Shown: positions 1,594 to 14,088, counted from the first letter of the whole stretch. The stretch is 63,129 nucleotides of DNA, filler included, from Octopus bimaculoides (GCF_001194135.2; 6 parts of 6 records of this genome joined end to end with filler, not necessarily neighbours in it), one strand, 5' to 3'. Notes: a model not told the origin generated them from the sequence alone. Numbers and translations are program-made.

Positions 1594-2117
1594 TATGTAA
1601 ATAGATAAATATATATCATATACATTTAGTTATTTCTGAAACCGCGTTGGTGGATGTTCTTCACAAATACGGCTACGATTTCCTTCTTAACTATAAATAG
1701 AGACCCATATTAATGTATAATTATTTACTTCTACAAATTCTAATCATCTGTCCGATGAAACATTAACCGAATATATAATGTTTGATTCTGATTTTGTACT
1801 CAACGAAAGCCACAAAAATTCCATGTAATAACACTTCTCTTCGTTAAAATATTTTTACCATTCTAAAAGAAAAGATGTTGAATGAAGATTATGTATCTTT
1901 TCGCCAACGAGGAATTTCAAACTAGCAATTATTGAAACTAGAGCTTTAATCAACCAACTCTGAGTATAATCGTTTCTAATATTGGAACAAGGCCTGAAAT
2001 TTGTGGGAGAAGGATAGCTAATAGCATCGACACCAGTGCGTAACTGGTACTTATTTTATCGACCCACGAAACGATGACAGGCATCGCCGCTAAGGATTTC
2101 AGTTATATCAGAGCGGA

Positions 2118-2951
2118 GCTAAGCATTTCGTCCAGGGTGCGAGCGATTCCCCCAGCTCGCTGCTTTTCCAAGTTCTGAGTATAATCTTTTCTACTCTAGG
2201 CTCGAGGGCCGAAATATTGAGGGAGGTAGGTGCCAGTCGATTAGATTGACCCCAGTACGCAACTGGTATTTAGTTTATCGAACCCCGAAACGATGAAAGG
2301 CAAAGTCGACCGCGGTGGAATTTGAACTCAGAACTCTCACTGCCAACAGATTAGTAACCACGACCATCACCACCGCCGCGGTGGTGGTGGTGGTGGTGGT
2401 GGTAGTCGTCGTGGTGGTAGTGGTTGTGGTGATGGTGGTCGTGGTGGTGGTAGTCGACGTGGTGGTCGTGGTGTTGTTGTTGGTGCTGGTGGTGCTGGTG
2501 GTGGTGCTGGTGGTTATCGTGGTTTGAATGTNNNNNNNNNNGCTAAGCATTTCGTCCAGGGTGCGAGCGATTCCCCCAGCTCGCTGCTTTTCCAAGTTCT
2601 GAGTATAATCTTTTCTACTCTAGGCTCGAGGGCCGAAATATTGAGGGAGGTAGGTGCCAGTCGATTAGATTGACCCCAGTACGCAACTGGTATTTAGTTT
2701 ATCGAACCCCGAAACGATGAAAGGCAAAGTCGACCGCGGTGGAATTTGAACTCAGAACTCTCACTGCCAACAGATTAGTAACCACGACCATCACCACCGC
2801 CGCGGTGGTGGTGGTGGTGGTGGTGGTAGTCGTCGTGGTGGTAGTGGTTGTGGTGATGGTGGTCGTGGTGGTGGTAGTCGACGTGGTGGTCGTGGTGTTG
2901 TTGTTGGTGCTGGTGGTGCTGGTGGTGGTGCTGGTGGTTATCGTGGTTTGA
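2118..2951. repeat. Exact 424-bp tandem duplication across a 10-N gap (SINE fragment plus (GTG)n tract); probable unmerged contig overlap
   Basis: gctaagcatttcgtccaggg at 2118 and 2542; ORFs 2315..2527 and 2739..2951 are identical and offset by 424. Confidence 0.9.
2186..2335 (-). mobile_element. SINE family B fragment (tRNA-like head; core GTCGACTTTGCCTTTCATCCTTTCGGGGTCGATAAA)
   Basis: Matches the in-window consensus seen at 12463-12640, 44072-44240 and 50795-51000; B-box-like GAGTTCAAATTCC. Confidence 0.85.
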
Positions 2952-3294: not shown

Positions 3295-3325
<31 letters not shown>

Positions 3326-3526
3326 ACACATACACACACAAAGGAACAGTAGCATCTATATACACGTATTCGAGAACTTGTGCTTGTATGTATGTGTGTA
3401 TATGTATATATATATGTATATATGTATACATTACAGACTCAGCAAACAGCAACTGTGTGTTGAGTTCGTCTTTCCGTAATGACTGTAATTAGAAAAAGAT
3501 CTCTAATGTAGACATGTACACATGCG

Positions 3527-3561
<35 letters not shown>

Positions 3562-3573
3562 ATAAATACATAC

Positions 3574-3650
<77 letters not shown>

Positions 3651-3890
3651 AACATCTATATATGCAGATATATACATGTTTAGATATATATACATGAACA
3701 TATGTATATGTATATTTATATAAACACACATATATAAACATTTTTATACATACATATACATTTATATATATGTGTATATACATATATATNNNNNNNNNNN
3801 NNNNNNNNNNNNNNNNNNNNNNNNNNNNNNNNNNNNNNNNNNNNNNNNNNNNNNNNNNNNNNNNNNNNNNNNNNNNNNNNNNNNNNNNNN

Positions 3891-5099: not shown

Positions 5100-5525
5100 T
5101 ATTCCTGGATATTCTTTTCCACTCTAGACACAAGGCCCGAAACTTTTTGGCGGAGTGGGTCAGACAAAAGATCGACTCCAGTACGCAACTGGTACTTAAT
5201 TTATCGACCCTGAAAGGATGAAGGCGAAGTCGACTTCCTCGGAATTTCAAATCAGAACGTAAAGACAGACGAAATACCGCTAAGCATTTCGTCCGGCATG
5301 CTAACGAGACTTTTCTAGTCTAGGCACAAGGCCCGAAATTCTGGGGAAGGGGATCCAGTCGATTAGATCGACTCCAGTACGCAACTGTTACTTAATTTAT
5401 CAACCCCGAAAAGAGGAATGACGAAGTCGATCTCGGCGGAATTTGAACTCAGAACATAAAGACAGACGAAATATTGCGAAGCGTTTCGCCGGGATGCTAA
5501 CGATTCTGCCAGCCCGCCACCTTAC
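5100..5525 (-). mobile_element. Two adjacent SINE family B copies
   Basis: Repeated cacaaggcccgaa...gtacgcaactg...gaactcagaac...gacgaaata blocks at ~5130 and ~5325. Confidence 0.85.
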
Positions 5526-5894
5526 CACCAAGTTATGTTAATGACAGAATAACAAAACACAAAACAGTTCATTTCCTTTTCTCTCTTTCACATTCTCTCT
5601 CCTTCAACCTTTCTCTCTCTTTCCCTCTCTCTTACCTGCCCAAAAGGTTCAACTACCAATATAACGAGGTGTTTTACCACTAAACTCTTTCCATTTTTAC
5701 CATTTCTTTCTTGCAGATAATAATTTAAAAGCTAATTACTAACTTCATAAAACTAATTTTTTTTCCAAAACACACACAAAAAAGAGAAAGAAAGAAATAT
5801 ACAATTATTTCATTTTCTTTTTTAAAAGTACAATCGACACGTCTTTCTTTACTGTATTATGTAGCTAATATTTCTGTGTATCTTTTCACCAATC

Positions 5895-5937
<43 letters not shown>

Positions 5938-6071
5938 TGTATGTATATACATATATATGTATGTATGTATGTATATACATATATATGTATGTATATACAT
6001 ATATACATATATATGTATGTATATACATATATATGTATGTATGTATATACATACATATATATCTATCTATG

Positions 6072-6114
<43 letters not shown>

Positions 6115-6712
6115 CAGACAGACAACTGTCAAGTGACGCATTATATACATATGGATATATACATTTATTGTGACTTAAATTTATATATCTTGTGTATATG
6201 TTTGTGTGTTGTTTTATCATCCAGATTGTTGCTGTTCCTCTCATCATCATCATCATCATCATAATCATTGTCATTCTAATCATCATTATCACTGTTGTCA
6301 TCATCATCATCATCTTTGTCATTATTATTATTATCATTATTATTATCATGCTTGTTGTTCTGAAAACTTTCAACGCCTCCATACCTTGAGGGTGAAACTC
6401 CAAATTCATTAATTAAATTATATATTGCAATATATGTATATATATTTTTTGTTTTGTTATTTTATAAAAAAAATTAGTGTATAACACAAACAGTTGTCAC
6501 ACATAACTGTGTGCATACGCGCAGAAACACACAATGATATACATAGACATACATAGACATACATGTATGTGTGTGTGTGTCTATGTGTGTGTCTATGTGT
6601 TGCGGTTATAGTATGTTCTTTGTCATACTTCAATTATTTGTTAGCTTTTCTTGAGTTTCATTTGTCGCTCAATGATAAAGTTAGTAGCAGTAATAACAAC
6701 AGCATTATTATT

Positions 6713-6769: not shown

Positions 6770-7003
6770 ATCATAATCGGAACTGCTGAGAAATGGTACA
6801 AACACCACCCTGGGGCTGTAACTGAGAGAGAAAACGTAACTATTCTTTGGGACTTCCCAGTATGTACAGATCTGACCATCAAGGCAAATAAACCAGATAT
6901 TGTTACGAAAGACAAAAGCAATAAAGTCTGTTTATTTATTGACATGAGCATACCCTGTGATTATAATATCTCGACAAAAGAATTTGATATGCTCAGAAAA
7001 TAT
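6770..7003 (+). mobile_element. R4/Dong-like non-LTR retrotransposon fragment, restriction-like endonuclease (PD-(D/E)xK) region
   Basis: KWYKHHPGAVTERENVTILWDFPVCTDLTIKANKPDIVTKDKSNKVCLFIDMSIP matches the ILWDF...RPDI...IDV.IP signature of RLE-clade elements. Confidence 0.85.
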
Positions 7004-7344
7004 GTGAGTATTATCTTCTACTTGTTTCGGTCGCTAGTTTGCGGTCAGGCTGGGATTCATCTTCTCGTGTTTTTTGTCAAACGAATCGACCGCAGTGATT
7101 ACTTTTTTCAAAAGTACGCTGCTTTTCTCACCGGTGTCTTTTGCCGAATCTCAAATTTGCAGGGATTTAAAGAAACCGACAACAGTCCTTCCAAGATAGT
7201 GGGGAATAAATACAAGCACAAGGAATTAACATACATACAGATATGTATTTTACTCTGCATACGTGTGTATGTGTGTATACGATGGCATCTTTCTCTTTTT
7301 GTCTACCAAATCCACCCTAAATGCATTATAGATATGTATATATA

Positions 7345-8034
7345 TACCTGCATACAAAAATCAGAGGAATGACCAGCAAATGTGGACTCCTATATGCTAG
7401 AAATAGATACCGAATCATCTAACTACGAAAAATATATGTTCTCAGTAAAAAATTCAGCGACACAACAGACTGTAAAAGGGCAAGACAAATGAAAAAATAC
7501 TAAATTAAAAAACGATTAACCTACGTACCATGGTTTCACCTGTTAAAATTTACATAAGTAAATATCTGCAGGATCGTCAGCGTAGTCTGTCGATTTGAGA
7601 TATAATTCCCAGAACTAGACACAAGACGTCCACCCGTAAGGGAGCACGTGTAGAGTTCTACAAATTACATTCAGTGTATCCTTTCAATTGTCTTCAATCT
7701 GGCGCGCTAAGTCCGCAAATAATTCTGCAGTTAATAAATTTTTGCAGCTAATTTACCGGTTTGAGAACATCATTATTTAAAATTTATTAATGAGGGTAGA
7801 AATTGATATTAATCAATTAAAACCAGTGGTCTAGCATATTAAAAAAATCCGAAGATTAAAATTATATTACATACAAAAATGTGGACTCCTATATGCTAGA
7901 AATAGATGCCGAATCATCTAACCACGAAAAGAATATGTTCTCAGTAAAAAATTCAGCGACACAACAGACTGTAAAAGGGCAAGACAAATTAAAAAATACT
8001 AAATTAAAAAACGATTAACCTACGTACCTGCATA
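7345..8034 (-). mobile_element. Non-coding hammerhead-bearing retroelement (retrozyme-like or non-autonomous Penelope pLTR-like): ~1.3 head-to-tail monomers with 10-bp TSD TACCTGCATA
   Basis: TSD at 7345-7354 and 8025-8034; direct repeat 7351-7529 vs 7870-8028 (offset 499-519); hammerhead at the monomer junction; no ORF seen. Confidence 0.8.
7521..7585 (-). ncRNA. Type I hammerhead ribozyme (predicted), cleavage after GUA between 7526 and 7525
   Basis: Minus strand: CTACG-CTGACGA-[T CCTG CAGAT ATTTAC TTAT GTAAAT TTTAA CAGG T]-GAAA-CCATGG-TA-CGTAG. Perfect 5-bp stem I, long stem II, palindromic stem III ACCATGGT. Confidence 0.8.
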
Positions 8035-8068: not shown

Positions 8069-8414
8069 NNNNNNNNNNNNNNNNNNNNNNNNNNNNNNNN
8101 NNNNNNNNNNNNNNNNNNNNNNNNNNNNNNNNNNNNNNNNNNNNNNNNNNNNNNNNNNNNNNNNNNNNNNNNNNNNNNNNNNNNNNNNNNNNNNNNNNNN
8201 NNNNNNNNNNNNNNNNNNNNNNNNNNNNNNNNNNNNNNNNNNNNNNNNNNNNNNNNNNNNNNNNNNNNNNNNNNNNNNNNNNNNNNNNNNNNNNNNNNNN
8301 NNNNNNNNNNNNNNNNNNNNNNNNNNNNNNNNNNNNNNNNNNNNNNNNNNNNNNNNNNNNNNNNNNNNNNNNNNNNNNNNNNNNNNNNNNNNNNNNNNNN
8401 NNNNNNNNNNNNNN

Positions 8415-9340: not shown

Positions 9341-9959
9341 NNNNNNNNNNNNNNNNNNNNNNNNNNNNNNNNNNNNNNNNNNNNNNNNNNNNNNNNNNNN
9401 NNNNNNNNNNNNNNNNNNNNNNNNNNNNNNNNNNNNNNNNNNNNNNNNNNNNNNNNNNNNNNNNNNNNNNNNNNNNNNNNNNNNNNNNNNNNNNNNNNNN
9501 NNNNNNNNNNNNNNNNNNNNNNNNNNNNNNNNNNNNNNNNNNNNNNNNNNNNNNNNNNNNNNNNNNNNNNNNNNNNNNNNNNNNNNNNNNNNNNNNNNNN
9601 NNNNNNNNNNNNNNNNNNNNNNNNNNNNNNNNNNNNNNNNNNNNNNNNNNNNNNNNNNNNNNNNNNNNNNNNNNNNNNNNNNNNNNNNNNNNNNNNNNNN
9701 NNNNNNNNNNNNNNNNNNNNNNNNNNNNNNNNNNNNNNNNNNNNNNNNNNNNNNNNNNNNNNNNNNNNNNNNNNNNNNNNNNNNNNNNNNNNNNNNNNNN
9801 NNNNNNNNNNNNNNNNNNNNNNNNNNNNNNNNNNNNNNNNNNNNNNNNNNNNNNNNNNNNNNNNNNNNNNNNNNNNNNNNNNNNNNNNNNNNNNNNNNNN
9901 NNNNNNNNNNNNNNNNNNNNNNNNNNNNNNNNNNNNNNNNNNNNNNNNNNNNNNNNNNN

Positions 9960-10195: not shown

Positions 10196-10399
10196 AATAA
10201 CAGAATATATATACACACGTGTGTGTGTGTGTGTGTGTGTGCCGCGTGTACACATATACATCCATAGATATAGATATAGTAAGTACGTACATGCATGTAC
10301 ATATGCATATAGAAAAGCAGATAGAGAGAGAGATACAGAGAGAGAGATACAGAGAGACAGATACAGAGAGAGGGAGACAGTGAGAGAGAGAGAGAGACA

Positions 10400-10676: not shown

Positions 10677-11046
10677 TACACACATGACTTTGTTCCGCAT
10701 AGTCACACGGATACACACCCACGTATACGGAGAGAGTCATTCAGAGAAGGCGAGAGAATGGAAGATGTATATATGTATATATATATGGAGAGAGAGACGG
10801 AGAATATATATATATACATATATNNNNNNNNNNNNNNNNNNNNNNNNNNNNNNNNNNNNNNNNNNNNNNNNNNNNNNNNNNNNNNNNNNNNNNNNNNNNN
10901 NNNNNNNNNNNNNNNNNNNNNNNNNNNNNNNNNNNNNNNNNNNNNNNNNNNNNNNNNNNNNNNNNNNNNNNNNNNNNNNNNNNNNNNNNNNNNNNNNNNN
11001 NNNNNNNNNNNNNNNNNNNNNNNNNNNNNNNNNNNNNNNNNNNNNN

Positions 11047-12462: not shown

Positions 12463-12640
12463 TAGGCGGCGAGCTGGCAGAAACGTTAGCACTACGGGCG
12501 AAATGCTTAGCGCTATTTCGTCTGCCGTTTCGTTCTGAGTTCAAATTTCGCCGAGGTCGACTTTGCCTTTCACCATTTCGGAGTCGATAAATCAAGTACC
12601 AGTTACGCACTGGGACGATGTAATCGACTTAATTCCTTTG
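12463..12640 (+). mobile_element. SINE family B near-full copy, preceded by a family A head (~12303-12440)
   Basis: GGCGGCGAGCTGGCAGAA A-box-like start, GAGTTCAAATTTC B-box-like, conserved core. Confidence 0.88.
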
Positions 12641-12740
12641 TCTGTCCTTGTTTGTCCTCTGTGTTTAGCTCCTTGTGGGCAATAAAGAAATAAGAAAATG
12701 TGTAGATGCTAGTCGTATAGATATTTAGATAGATAGACAG

Positions 12741-13020
12741 ATACAAAAATAAGAGGAATGACCAGCAAAAGTGGACTCCTATATGCTAGAAATAGATGCC
12801 GAATCATCTAACCACGAAAAAAATATATATATTCTCATGACAACATTTTTTTTTCGTGGTTAGATGATTCGGCATCTATTTCTAGCATATAGGAGTCCAC
12901 TTTTGCTGGTCATTCCTCTTATTTTTGTATGTAATATAATTTTAATCTTCGGATTTTTTTTAATATGCTAGACCACTGGTTTTAATTGATTAATATCAAT
13001 TTCTACCCTCATTAATAAAT
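12741..13020. mobile_element. Second member of the 7345-8034 family, rearranged into a perfect 83-bp inverted repeat (arms 12741-12823 and 12848-12930) plus a 90-bp extension
   Basis: Arms are exact reverse complements; sequence matches 7351-7430 and ~7780-7930; tttagatagataga on both flanks. Confidence 0.9.
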
Positions 13021-14088
13021 TTTAGATAGATAGATAGGTAGGTAGGTAGAGAGACAGACAGACAGACAGATAGATAGACAAAACTAGGATAAACATGCGT
13101 TATATAAAATAAACTTGTGTTTATCTTTAGTTTTCCTGTATTTGTTCTGTAACTCATAACTAGTAACACTAATCACTATGGATGTTACTTAACAATTAAA
13201 CAGAAAGGAGACTGCGTGATGACAATCTACATGGAACTCTACACATAACTAGCAATTATTTATGTGCTCAATATCTACTATATGTGTGTGTGTCAGTATG
13301 TATATGTGTGCGCCTGTAAAAGATTTAACTGTGTGGAGATAAATATATCAGTCTTAGACTTCTGTTAATTAAAAATTACTTGTTCACGGATACAGTGAAC
13401 TTGCTACATACCCCCAAGCTTTGATCCAATGTTATACCTTTCAAATATTATGATATCCGGACATTGCTGCACCACATAGAATGCATTATTATTCTCCATT
13501 AAACAGCAAAGATTGATAACTATGAAGAGTCAGCTTGTGTTTCGCATCCGTAGTCTTTTGTTTGTTGAAAACTAAAAGCAGTAACAACTGCCTAATTCTA
13601 ACACAAGATTTTATCGACATTCGGGTAGATACAATGCTGGGCTGACCCCAAAATAATTTGCAATGGTTATGTAAAAGCTTCGACTAAATATATCAGGTCT
13701 TTTGTCTAACACACTTGACATTCTTCAACTTTATCCACTGCCACGGAAGGAAGGGCATGTCGATCACTCGGGAACGATTGTAATTTGATACCAGATTCCC
13801 TGATTTTGGCTCGTATTTTCAGATTGTTTTCTGTTTTGTTTTCTTTGACACATTCTGATACAATGAGTCCGCCTATATGTCAGAATACAATTCTATATCC
13901 TGGATTAAGGGTAATAAATCCATACCTACTTTGTATTGAAAATTACTTCTTCCAGTTTTGTTGTCATAGCCATGATTAATGTAGCTTTAATTATATTAAT
14001 CAACTTCTAACTCCTCATCCACACGCCTAAAACAAAAATGCTTCTTTCTTTCCTATTTCAATGAACAGAGATGTGTGATGGAAGTACA

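What the first reader, a model, noticed from the sequence alone, without database searches (positions are those of the whole stretch)
7345..8034. Non-coding retroelement whose 5' end coincides with its own ribozyme cleavage site, flanked by a 10-bp TSD
Seen: TACCTGCATA flanks the insert (7345-7354 and 8025-8034). In minus orientation the insert starts at 8024 with CGTAGG, exactly the sequence 3' of the predicted cut (4-nt GGTA microhomology makes the boundary slightly ambiguous). It then runs a 499-nt monomer to the intact hammerhead at 7526 and continues ~170 nt into a second monomer. The two repeats differ by about 5 substitutions and a 20-bp microhomology deletion. No ORF was seen. Inference: a self-cleaved, terminally redundant RNA was reinserted by target-primed reverse transcription using a trans-acting RT. 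This is retrozyme or mini-Penelope logic, and ~500-520-nt linear or circular RNAs are predicted. I cannot tell from sequence whether this family is already catalogued in cephalopods.
Basis: partly seen in the sequence, partly recalled or inferred. Interest (0 to 1): 0.85.

Follow-up and report, generated by a model that had tools for sequence, protein, structure and literature searches.

The report
Non-coding hammerhead retroelement of Penelope type
This is a 670-base insertion of a small non-coding mobile element that carries a hammerhead-type self-cutting RNA motif. It looks like a dependent relative of Penelope-like retrotransposons, a kind already described in other animals, so it is a new example and not a new kind.

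Summary
TACCTGCATA occurs only at 7345-7354 and 8025-8034 and brackets a 670-nt insert (7355-8024, sense on the minus strand). The insert is one 499-nt unit plus 171 nt of a second, differing by 5 substitutions and a 20-bp deletion. A second copy in the window (12741-13028) shows that the deletion lies in the first unit.

At 7585-7521(-) there is one hammerhead-like motif: CUGACGA, a long helix II, GAAA, the palindrome ACCAUGGU and a 5-bp helix I. Random sequence of this size gives such a motif about 3 times in 10,000. Two copies are predicted to fold into a double hammerhead. Rfam does not call it, and helix II closes atypically.

The insert starts at the predicted cut, within a 4-nt microhomology. 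Both copies in the window end within 1 nt of the same internal position, both sit in microsatellites with TSDs, and the second is a head-to-head inverted pair. These are Penelope-like (PLE) hallmarks.

Best reading: a non-autonomous PLE-type element, or non-LTR retrozyme, copied by target-primed reverse transcription from a fixed start site. That ribozyme cleavage made the 5' end rests on one copy. No further copies, no partner element and no organism identity could be obtained. It is a new member of a known kind.

The parts
8025..8034 (.). Target-site duplication on the element's 5' side (TATGCAGGTA in element orientation). Its last 4 nt, GGTA, equal the 4 nt that precede the ribozyme cut.
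7345..7354 (.). Target-site duplication on the element's 3' side. Its first 4 nt, TATG (7354-7351), also continue the family consensus, which is microhomology at the priming junction.
7526..8024 (-). Complete unit of 499 nt, from the first base after the predicted cut (CGTAGG at 8024) to the cut-site A at 7526. It carries a 20-bp deletion relative to the family, so the ancestral unit is 519 nt. GC content is 33%.
7870..8024 (-). 5' copy of the terminal repeat R (consensus positions 1-175 minus the 20-bp deletion).
7521..7585 (-). Hammerhead-like motif, type I topology: helix I CUACG/CGUAG; core CUGACGA; an unpaired U; helix II CCUG/CAGG extended by AUUUAC/GUAAAU with loop UUAU; GAAA; helix III ACC-AU-GGU (an 8-nt palindrome). 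The predicted cut lies after A7526. It is the only copy in the window.
   Evidence: no Rfam hit
7355..7525 (-). 3' copy of the terminal repeat R (171 nt, or 175 with the TATG microhomology). It ends at ...GATTTTTG(TATG), the family's shared 3' terminus.
7358..7377 (-). 20-bp segment GCTGGTCATTCCTCTGATTT. It is present here and in both arms of copy 2 but is missing from unit 1, where the deletion lies between two ATTT repeats.
12741..12837 (-). Second family copy, left arm (consensus about 76-174). Its outer end, ...TATTTTTGTAT, is the same 3' terminus as in copy 1, within 1 nt, and shows no microhomology to the flank.
12838..13028 (+). Second family copy, right arm in inverted orientation (consensus about 77-267). 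It runs through the canonical 3' site and ends at ...AAATTTTA. It joins the left arm head-to-head at a CATG centre.
12724..12740 (.). Left copy of the 17-bp flanking duplication of copy 2 (TTTAGATAGATAGACAG).
13021..13037 (.). Right copy of the 17-bp flanking duplication of copy 2 (TTTAGATAGATAGATAG, 1 mismatch). Its first 4 nt overlap element homology. The context is a (GATA)n microsatellite.

Best explanation
The insert is a copy of a short non-coding retroelement with a consensus unit of about 519 nt. It is best described as a non-autonomous Penelope-like element, which is the same thing as an animal 'non-LTR retrozyme'.

The proposed sequence of events is inferred, not shown:
1. A source locus with more than one unit is transcribed.
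2. A PLE reverse transcriptase and GIY-YIG endonuclease supplied in trans nicks a microsatellite or AT-rich target.
3. cDNA synthesis starts at a fixed internal site of the RNA, consensus position 174-175, about 175 nt downstream of a hammerhead cut site.
4. Synthesis runs back through the hammerhead and one whole unit and stops at the RNA's 5' end.
5. That 5' end lies at the cut site of the preceding hammerhead.

Because the start lies 175 nt past one cut and the stop lies at the previous cut, the copy carries a 155-175-nt direct terminal repeat (a pseudo-LTR) and one internal hammerhead. Staggered nicks give the 10-bp TSD.

The hammerhead is a minimal type-I motif whose helix III is an 8-nt palindrome. 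It should cut only when paired with a second copy as a double hammerhead. That would explain why one site was cut and the next was not.

Shown here: the anatomy, the TSDs, the shared 3' end and the motif statistics. Inferred: the enzyme, the cleavage and the order of events.
For: - **TSD:** the 10-bp duplication is unique in the window and abuts both homology breakpoints.
- **Unit structure:** 1.34 units with a 97%-identical terminal repeat.
- **Hammerhead motif:** one hit in the window, against 3e-4 expected per random window.
- **Match to PLE min-HHRs (PMC4209133):** a short helix I, an unpaired nucleotide after A9, a long helix II and a palindromic helix III.
- **Double hammerhead:** two copies cofold into it, with an 8-bp intermolecular helix III, at -40.2 kcal/mol against 2 x -14.9 for separate monomers.
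- **Start of the insert:** it begins at CGTAGG, directly after the predicted cut.
- **Shared 3' end:** two independent insertions end at ...TTTTTGTAT(G), within 1 nt of each other, and one shows no target microhomology. This matches the internal, homology-independent RT start described for a PLE (PMC11167929).
- **Copy 2 layout:** a head-to-head inverted pair with a 17-bp TSD in (GATA)n. Copy 1 sits in (TA/TATG)n. PLEs typically show partial tandems, inverted 5'-truncated copies and a microsatellite bias (PMC8557442).
- **Strand-specific structure:** the sense-strand unit folds far better than shuffles (z = -5.5 to -6.7), while the antisense gives z = -2.0.
- **Retrozyme traits:** 33% GC and no ORF, as described for non-LTR retrozymes (PMC7229834).
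- **Link to PLEs:** animal retrozymes have been tied to PLE pseudo-LTRs (bioRxiv 10.64898/2026.07.22.740005).
Against: - Only one hammerhead copy and one informative 5' end exist in the data, so covariation and 5'-end pile-up cannot be tested.
- Rfam hammerhead models do not score the motif.
- Helix II closes with C-G and an extra U on each side, not the highly conserved G10.1-C11.1 pair (PMC4209133).
- The GGTA and TATG microhomologies blur both junctions by 4 nt.
- For the one PLE studied biochemically, hammerhead cleavage was not needed for insertion in vitro, and no RNA-seq reads began at the cut site (PMC11167929).
- There is no RT or endonuclease ORF in the window, and no autonomous partner with matching termini could be sought.
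- The right arm of copy 2 starts at a different site (consensus 267), so the 3' start site is preferred and not absolute.
Confidence: 0.72

Rival explanations
1. Same element and same enzyme, but the 5' end is an ordinary 5' truncation or a microhomology join. The cDNA was joined to the target through the shared GGTA, and its position at the ribozyme cut is coincidence. The hammerhead then plays no part in defining the copy.
For: - Most PLE insertions are 5'-truncated at variable points, with a truncated upstream copy forming the pseudo-LTR (PMC8557442; bioRxiv 2026).
- The junction carries a 4-nt microhomology.
- HHR cleavage is dispensable for PLE insertion in vitro.
- The finding was picked out because of the coincidence, which is a selection effect.
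Against: A junction within 0-4 nt of the cut has a chance of only about 5 in 519 (about 1%) for a random truncation point. The 10/10 TSD is most simply read as wholly target-derived, which puts the first element base exactly at the cut.
Confidence: 0.4
2. Circular-RNA route, the classical retrozyme model. A self-cleaved 519-nt monomer was ligated into a circle, and reverse transcription went round it more than once. It stopped when the circle opened at its own hammerhead, giving a copy longer than one unit.
For: - Non-LTR retrozymes accumulate as circRNAs, and more-than-unit cDNA from circles is the published model (PMC7229834, PMC7761336).
- The sense unit is strongly structured as a circle too (z = -5.8).
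- The product (175 nt plus one unit, ending at the junction) fits this route.
Against: - Nothing in the DNA distinguishes a circle from a linear multimer.
- The two repeats differ by 5 substitutions and a 20-bp indel, and on a single circle both would come from the same template. These changes would then have to be later mutations or RT errors.
- It is unexplained why synthesis passes the junction once and stops the second time.
Confidence: 0.25
3. The 5' end is the element's transcription start. An internal promoter in the terminal repeat starts RNA at CGTAGG, so a full-length copy begins there without any cleavage. The hammerhead just upstream is then incidental or serves another purpose.
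For: - PLE pseudo-LTRs are thought to hold the promoter (PMC11167929).
- A fixed 5' end and a fixed 3' start would give the same repeat-unique-repeat layout.
Against: - It needs the start site to coincide with the predicted cut by chance.
- No promoter evidence was gathered.
- The sense strand has many T runs, which argues only against Pol III.
Confidence: 0.12
4. Not a mobile element insertion: a fragment of a satellite or tandem array, or a local duplication or assembly artefact, with a chance flanking repeat.
For: - The window is a gapped draft with many microsatellites. An N gap starts 44 bp from the insert.
- Retrozyme-like repeats do form satellites.
Against: - The unique 10-bp repeat sits exactly at both homology breakpoints (p < 0.004).
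- A second, dispersed copy 5 kb away has its own flanking duplication and the same 3' end.
- The insert lies within one gap-free contig stretch, 3891-8068.
Confidence: 0.04

Closest known systems
Metazoan non-LTR retrozymes (Cervera & de la Pena 2020, PMC7229834; review PMC7761336)
   Same: - Non-coding and low in GC (33%).
- Type-I hammerhead with a weak, palindromic helix III.
- More-than-unit copies with a TSD longer than 4 bp.
- A strongly self-paired sense RNA.
- The unit length of 519 nt lies inside the 51-972 bp range reported for vertebrate families.
   Different: - Described retrozymes are usually 170-400-nt units in arrays with at least two hammerheads. Here there are 1.34 units and one hammerhead.
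- The hammerhead lacks the G10.1-C11.1 pair and is not recognised by Rfam.
- Expression and circularity are untested.
Penelope-like elements and their pseudo-LTR min-hammerheads (Cervera & de la Pena 2014, PMC4209133; Craig et al. 2021, PMC8557442)
   Same: - Partial-tandem insertion giving a terminal direct repeat.
- A head-to-head inverted variant (copy 2).
- Microsatellite or AT-rich targets.
- A hammerhead placed in the repeat region with a 5-bp helix I, an unpaired base after A9 and a long helix II, built to work as a dimer.
   Different: - No RT/GIY-YIG ORF: the whole unit is 519 nt.
- Sequence similarity to the termini of an autonomous PLE could not be tested.
[quoted passage not shown] 2024, PMC11167929)
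   Same: The 3' end of the copies is a fixed internal RNA position downstream of the hammerhead cut: about 85-92 nt in PAc and 174-175 nt here. It is used without homology to the nicked target (copy 2, left arm).
   Different: - In PAc, hammerhead cleavage was not required in vitro and no transcripts starting at the cut were seen. Here one copy starts at the cut.
- Only two 3' ends are available here.
5'-end processing ribozymes of non-LTR retrotransposons (HDV-like in R2 and L1Tc; cited in PMC4209133 and PMC7761336)
   Same: The logic is the same: a self-cleaving RNA trims the upstream transcript so that the element RNA has a defined 5' end.
   Different: - HDV-like ribozymes cut at their own 5' edge and travel with the element's 5' end.
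- A type-I hammerhead cuts near its 3' edge, so it stays on the upstream unit. A new copy therefore lacks a ribozyme ahead of its 5' end.

Membership tests
Hammerhead ribozyme (type I, PLE-type minimal or dimeric) | Conserved core CUGANGA ... GAAA ... UH, cut after H17, with helices I, II and III in type-I order | tested here: met
   CUACG-CUGACGA-U-CCUG...CAGG-U-GAAA-CCAUGG-UA|CGUAG at 7585-7521(-). It is the single hit in the window, with a null rate of 1 in 3000 random windows.
Hammerhead ribozyme (type I, PLE-type minimal or dimeric) | G10.1-C11.1 pair closing helix II (highly conserved, PMC4209133) | tested here: not met
   Helix II closes with C-G. It is flanked by a U after A9 (usual in PLE min-HHRs) and a second U before G12 (unusual). 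The alternative reading is a U.U pair at 10.1/11.1.
Hammerhead ribozyme (type I, PLE-type minimal or dimeric) | Short palindromic helix III or loop 3 that allows a double hammerhead | tested here: met
   ACCAUGGU is an 8-nt palindrome. The cofold of two copies gives an intermolecular helix III and trans helix I at -40.2 kcal/mol, against -29.8 for two separate monomers.
Hammerhead ribozyme (type I, PLE-type minimal or dimeric) | Match to curated covariance models (Rfam Hammerhead families) | tested here: not met
   No hammerhead hit at E<=1 on the window or at E<=10 on 7480-7640. The 26-nt helix II insert and near-absent helix III may explain this, but that was not tested.
Hammerhead ribozyme (type I, PLE-type minimal or dimeric) | Compensatory changes in the helices across copies, and self-cleavage activity | not testable with these tools
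   Only one hammerhead copy is available, no further copies were found, and there is no wet assay.
Non-LTR retrozyme | Non-coding; no LTR, PBS or PPT; low GC; TSD longer than 4 bp | tested here: met
   Longest stop-free frame 52 codons; the one frame searched (52 aa, 7860-8015) has no protein relative. GC is 33%. The TSD is 10 bp. PBS and PPT were judged by eye only.
Non-LTR retrozyme | Tandem units, each with a hammerhead (at least two ribozymes per locus), so that monomers can be released | tested here: not met
   This locus holds 1.34 units and one hammerhead. The family may have such loci elsewhere, but this is unknown.
Non-LTR retrozyme | Highly self-paired unit RNA | tested here: met
   Sense unit z = -5.5 to -6.7 as linear or circular RNA, 62% of bases paired; antisense z = -2.0. 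This is prediction only.
Non-LTR retrozyme | Expressed as linear and circular monomer RNAs | not testable with these tools
   No transcript data.
Penelope-like element (non-autonomous derivative) | Partial-tandem insertion forming a pseudo-LTR, and/or an adjacent inverted 5'-truncated copy | tested here: met
   Copy 1 is a partial tandem. Copy 2 is a head-to-head inverted pair that is 93% identical.
Penelope-like element (non-autonomous derivative) | Fixed internal RT start site defining the 3' end, independent of target homology | tested here: met
   Copy 1 and the left arm of copy 2 end at consensus positions 175 and 174. With n = 2, a third end (the right arm of copy 2) lies at 267.
Penelope-like element (non-autonomous derivative) | Insertion bias for AT-rich or microsatellite DNA, with variable TSDs | tested here: met
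   The targets are (TA/TATG)n and (GATA)n edges, with TSDs of 10 and 17 bp. n = 2.
Penelope-like element (non-autonomous derivative) | Termini shared with an autonomous RT + GIY-YIG element in the same genome | not testable with these tools
   No RT or EN frame in the window.

The most novel reading that the evidence does not exclude
In this family the hammerhead really does set the 5' end of the retrotransposition template, while a PLE-type internal start site sets the 3' end. Two RNA-encoded landmarks, not LTR machinery, would then create a repeat-unique-repeat non-coding element. A genome-wide pile-up of 5' ends at the cut would be the first in-vivo footprint of a function for the 'mystery' hammerheads of PLEs and retrozymes.
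Probability: 0.35. Interest if true: 0.6.

Novelty: new member of a known kind. Interest (0 to 1): 0.4.

Why it matters
The role of hammerheads in Penelope-like elements and animal retrozymes is still called unknown. See PMC8557442 and PMC7761336. In the one in-vitro system studied, cleavage was not needed (PMC11167929).

A family whose copies start at the cut and end at a fixed start site would let that question be answered by simply tabulating genomic copy ends. It would also extend retrozymes to a further animal lineage; the library search found no paper describing them in cephalopods.

By itself this single copy is an anecdote. The element class, its PLE link and its dimeric ribozyme design are already published.

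Tried and rejected
**Searches that found nothing**
- Rfam on the whole piece and on 7480-7640 gave no hammerhead. All listed hits are microsatellite or palindrome artefacts below gathering scores.
- To fish for more copies, I searched the 52-aa stop-free frame of the repeat against 5.8 billion proteins. No candidate turned up.
- An exact 27-mer of the repeat was scanned in metagenome and viral contigs, with no hits. A degenerate hammerhead pattern in metagenome contigs also gave no hits.
- To reach the source genome through the neighbouring LINE-like fragment, I found only one 1.3-kb ENA contig at 66% identity. It holds no copy of the element.
Instead I scanned five selected ORFs, which gave nothing above threshold, and read the listed stop-free frames of 45 codons or more (entropy-filtered, no N) by eye; no RT or endonuclease was recognised.
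- nhmmer with the 519-nt unit found no further fragments in the window.

**Ideas rejected**
- The 20 bp is not an insertion in the 3' repeat, because copy 2 has it in both arms.
- The 3' end is not an arbitrary run-on point, because copy 2 shares it.
- Simple snap-back does not explain copy 2, because its right arm is 92-97 nt longer than the left (about 92 nt by consensus end points 267 vs 174-175; 94-97 nt by arm lengths) and runs past the left arm's end point.

**Not available**
- Lunse et al. 2017 on dimeric PLE hammerheads is not held in the library.

Full report
**1. The observation**

The piece is a gapped, microsatellite-rich draft sequence. Its N runs are at 715-1545, 2532-2541, 3790-3890, 8069-8414, 9341-9959 and 10824-11046.

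TACCTGCATA occurs only twice, at 7345 and 8025. Even in this low-complexity window, a 10-mer direct repeat within +-4 nt of two random positions is found for only 0.2-0.4% of position pairs.

Between the two 10-mers lie 670 nt. On the minus strand they begin CGTAGG at 8024 and run 499 nt to ...CCATGGTA at 7526. They then repeat CGTAGG... for another 171 nt, to 7355. The two repeat copies differ by 5 substitutions in 148 nt and by a 20-bp indel flanked by ATTT.

The longest stop-free frame in the insert is 52 codons. The one frame that was searched (52 aa, 7860-8015) has no protein relative.

**2. The ribozyme motif**

At 7585-7521(-) the sequence reads CUACG-CUGACGA-U-CCUG-(internal loop, AUUUAC-UUAU-GUAAAU)-CAGG-U-GAAA-CCAUGG-UA|CGUAG.

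A deliberately relaxed type-I hammerhead descriptor was applied. It required a 5-bp helix I, the two core boxes, a 4-bp helix II with up to one unpaired base on each side, a minimal helix III, and a cut after UH. It finds this site and nothing else in the window. It hit 1 of 3000 random sequences of the same length and dinucleotide content.

Several details match the 'min-HHRs' described in PLE pseudo-LTRs (PMC4209133):
- a short helix I;
- an unpaired base after A9;
- a long helix II;
- a palindromic helix III.

ACCAUGGU is an 8-nt palindrome. Two copies of the motif are predicted to fold into the classical double hammerhead, with helix III and helix I formed between molecules. The energy is -40.2 kcal/mol, against -14.9 for each monomer, whose own best fold is not the hammerhead.

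Two things count against the motif:
- Rfam's models do not report it at any threshold tried.
- Helix II closes with C-G plus a second unpaired U, in place of the conserved G10.1-C11.1 pair.

With one copy only, covariation cannot be tested. I treat the motif as a credible but unproven hammerhead.

**3. A second copy in the same window changes the picture**

BLAST and nhmmer with the unit find one more member at 12741-13028. It is a head-to-head inverted pair:
- The left arm is sense on the minus strand and covers consensus positions about 76-174.
- The right arm is sense on the plus strand and covers consensus positions about 77-267.
- The arms join at a CATG centre and are 93% identical over the shared part.

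This copy provides three pieces of information.

(a) Both arms contain the 20 bp. The ancestral unit is therefore 519 nt, and unit 1 of the flagged insert carries a microhomology deletion.

(b) The right arm runs through ...TTTTTGTATG into TAATATAATTTT..., so that point is internal to the unit. Even so, the left arm ends at ...TTTTTGTAT, and the flagged insert ends at ...TTTTTG(TATG). These are the same position within 1 nt. Two independent insertions sharing a 3' end has a chance of roughly 1% if ends were random, and it points to a defined start site for reverse transcription. In the left arm of copy 2 there is no homology between that end and the target.

(c) Copy 2 is flanked by TTTAGATAGATAGA[C/T]AG, which is 17 bp with one mismatch, at the edge of a (GATA)n tract. 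Copy 1 sits at the edge of a (TA/TATG)n tract.

**4. What this resembles mechanistically**

These features are described for Penelope-like elements (PMC8557442):
- partial tandems that create pseudo-LTRs;
- adjacent inverted 5'-truncated copies;
- insertion into microsatellite or AT-rich DNA;
- hammerheads in the repeat region.

For the Anolis element PAc, purified protein nicks both strands of AT-rich DNA. It starts reverse transcription at a fixed internal RNA site, about 85-92 nt downstream of the hammerhead cut, and that site is not homologous to the target (PMC11167929). The present family has the same layout, with the start site 174-175 nt past the cut.

The rest of the profile fits animal non-LTR retrozymes (PMC7229834, PMC7761336):
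- The unit is non-coding and has 33% GC.
- Its sense strand folds much better than shuffled controls, with z = -5.5 to -6.7. The antisense gives z = -2.0.

A 2026 preprint links vertebrate retrozymes to PLE pseudo-LTRs.

**5. Most likely mechanism**

A multi-unit transcript serves as template. A PLE enzyme supplied in trans nicks the target. The freed 3' end CATA-3' can pair with UAUG at the start site, which accounts for the TATG microhomology. cDNA synthesis then runs through 175 nt, across the hammerhead and through one full unit, and stops at the RNA 5' end.

That stop lies at the cut of the preceding hammerhead. The fixed start and the stop at the cut together create the terminal repeat.

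A dimer-only ribozyme that cuts inefficiently would leave the internal site intact. This locus has one hammerhead only, so it cannot release a monomer. Unit-length linear or circular RNAs of about 519 nt are expected only from loci with at least two units.

**6. What remains uncertain**

The link between the 5' end and cleavage rests on one copy, and it is blurred by the GGTA shared between the target and the element. A random truncation would land there about 1% of the time. The finding was also selected because of this coincidence. In PAc, cleavage is not needed for insertion in vitro.

The rivals are:
- a chance or microhomology-guided truncation;
- a circular template;
- a transcription start at CGTAGG;
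- a non-mobile duplication, which is very unlikely.

Copy 2 gives no second 5' end, because its arms meet each other at consensus positions 77-80.

No more copies could be retrieved. The element's frames have no protein hits, and DNA scans of the metagenome and viral collections were empty. The neighbouring LINE-like fragment led only to one short ENA contig. No RT or endonuclease frame is in the window.

The organism is not verified. If it is right, a partner is plausible, because Penelope elements are abundant and recently active in Octopus vulgaris (PMC13282606) and in other coleoids (PMC8967140). My library search found no paper describing hammerheads or retrozymes in cephalopods. That is not proof that Dfam or Repbase lack the family.

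**8. Verdict**

This is a real feature, correctly described, and a new member of a known kind: a PLE-type non-autonomous hammerhead element, or non-LTR retrozyme.

Its added value is a testable lead. The fixed 3' start site is supported by two copies. The 5' end at the cut is supported by one copy. Tabulating copy ends in the source genome would settle whether the hammerhead defines the template's 5' end.

Noticed in passing
window 12741-13028: Second copy of the same family, arranged as a head-to-head inverted pair around a CATG centre and flanked by a 17-bp duplication. Rfam's below-threshold 'MIR1878', 'MIR159' and 'mir-4536' hits at 12742-12929 are simply this palindrome.
   Followed up: yes
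window 7318-7326 and 12716-12724 (+ strand TATAGATAT): Both insertion sites carry the same 9-mer (ATATCTATA in element orientation) 15-16 nt beyond the element's 3' end. It could reflect a target preference of the endonuclease, or chance in TA-rich DNA.
   Followed up: partly
window 6780-7000 (+): Stop-free frame ...AEKWYKHHPGAVTERENVTILWDFPVCTDLTIKANKPDIVTKDKSNKVCLFIDMSIPCDYNISTKEFDMLRKY. From memory it looks like the conserved C-terminal part of a non-LTR retrotransposon ORF. There is no Pfam hit, and the only relative found is an unnamed 88-aa ENA metagenome protein at 66% identity.
   Followed up: partly
window 2118-2531 and 2542-2955: A 414-bp segment is repeated at 100% identity on either side of a 10-N gap. 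This may be an assembly or scaffolding artefact and not a true tandem duplication.
   Followed up: no
window 1959-2083, 2174-2334, 2598-2758, 5109-5307, 5310-5522, 12464-12629: Several 75-84% identical copies of a short dispersed repeat, in both orientations, that looks like a SINE (recurring ...GTCGATAAATCAAGTACCAGTTACGCACTGGG...). One copy ends about 100 bp from copy 2 of the hammerhead element.
   Followed up: no
window 3300-3760, 5890-6125, 6510-6600, 10200-10300: All Rfam miRNA 'hits' here (mir-297, mir-3149, mir-466, mir-1277 and others) lie in TA/TG microsatellites and are well below gathering scores. They are artefacts of low complexity.
   Followed up: yes
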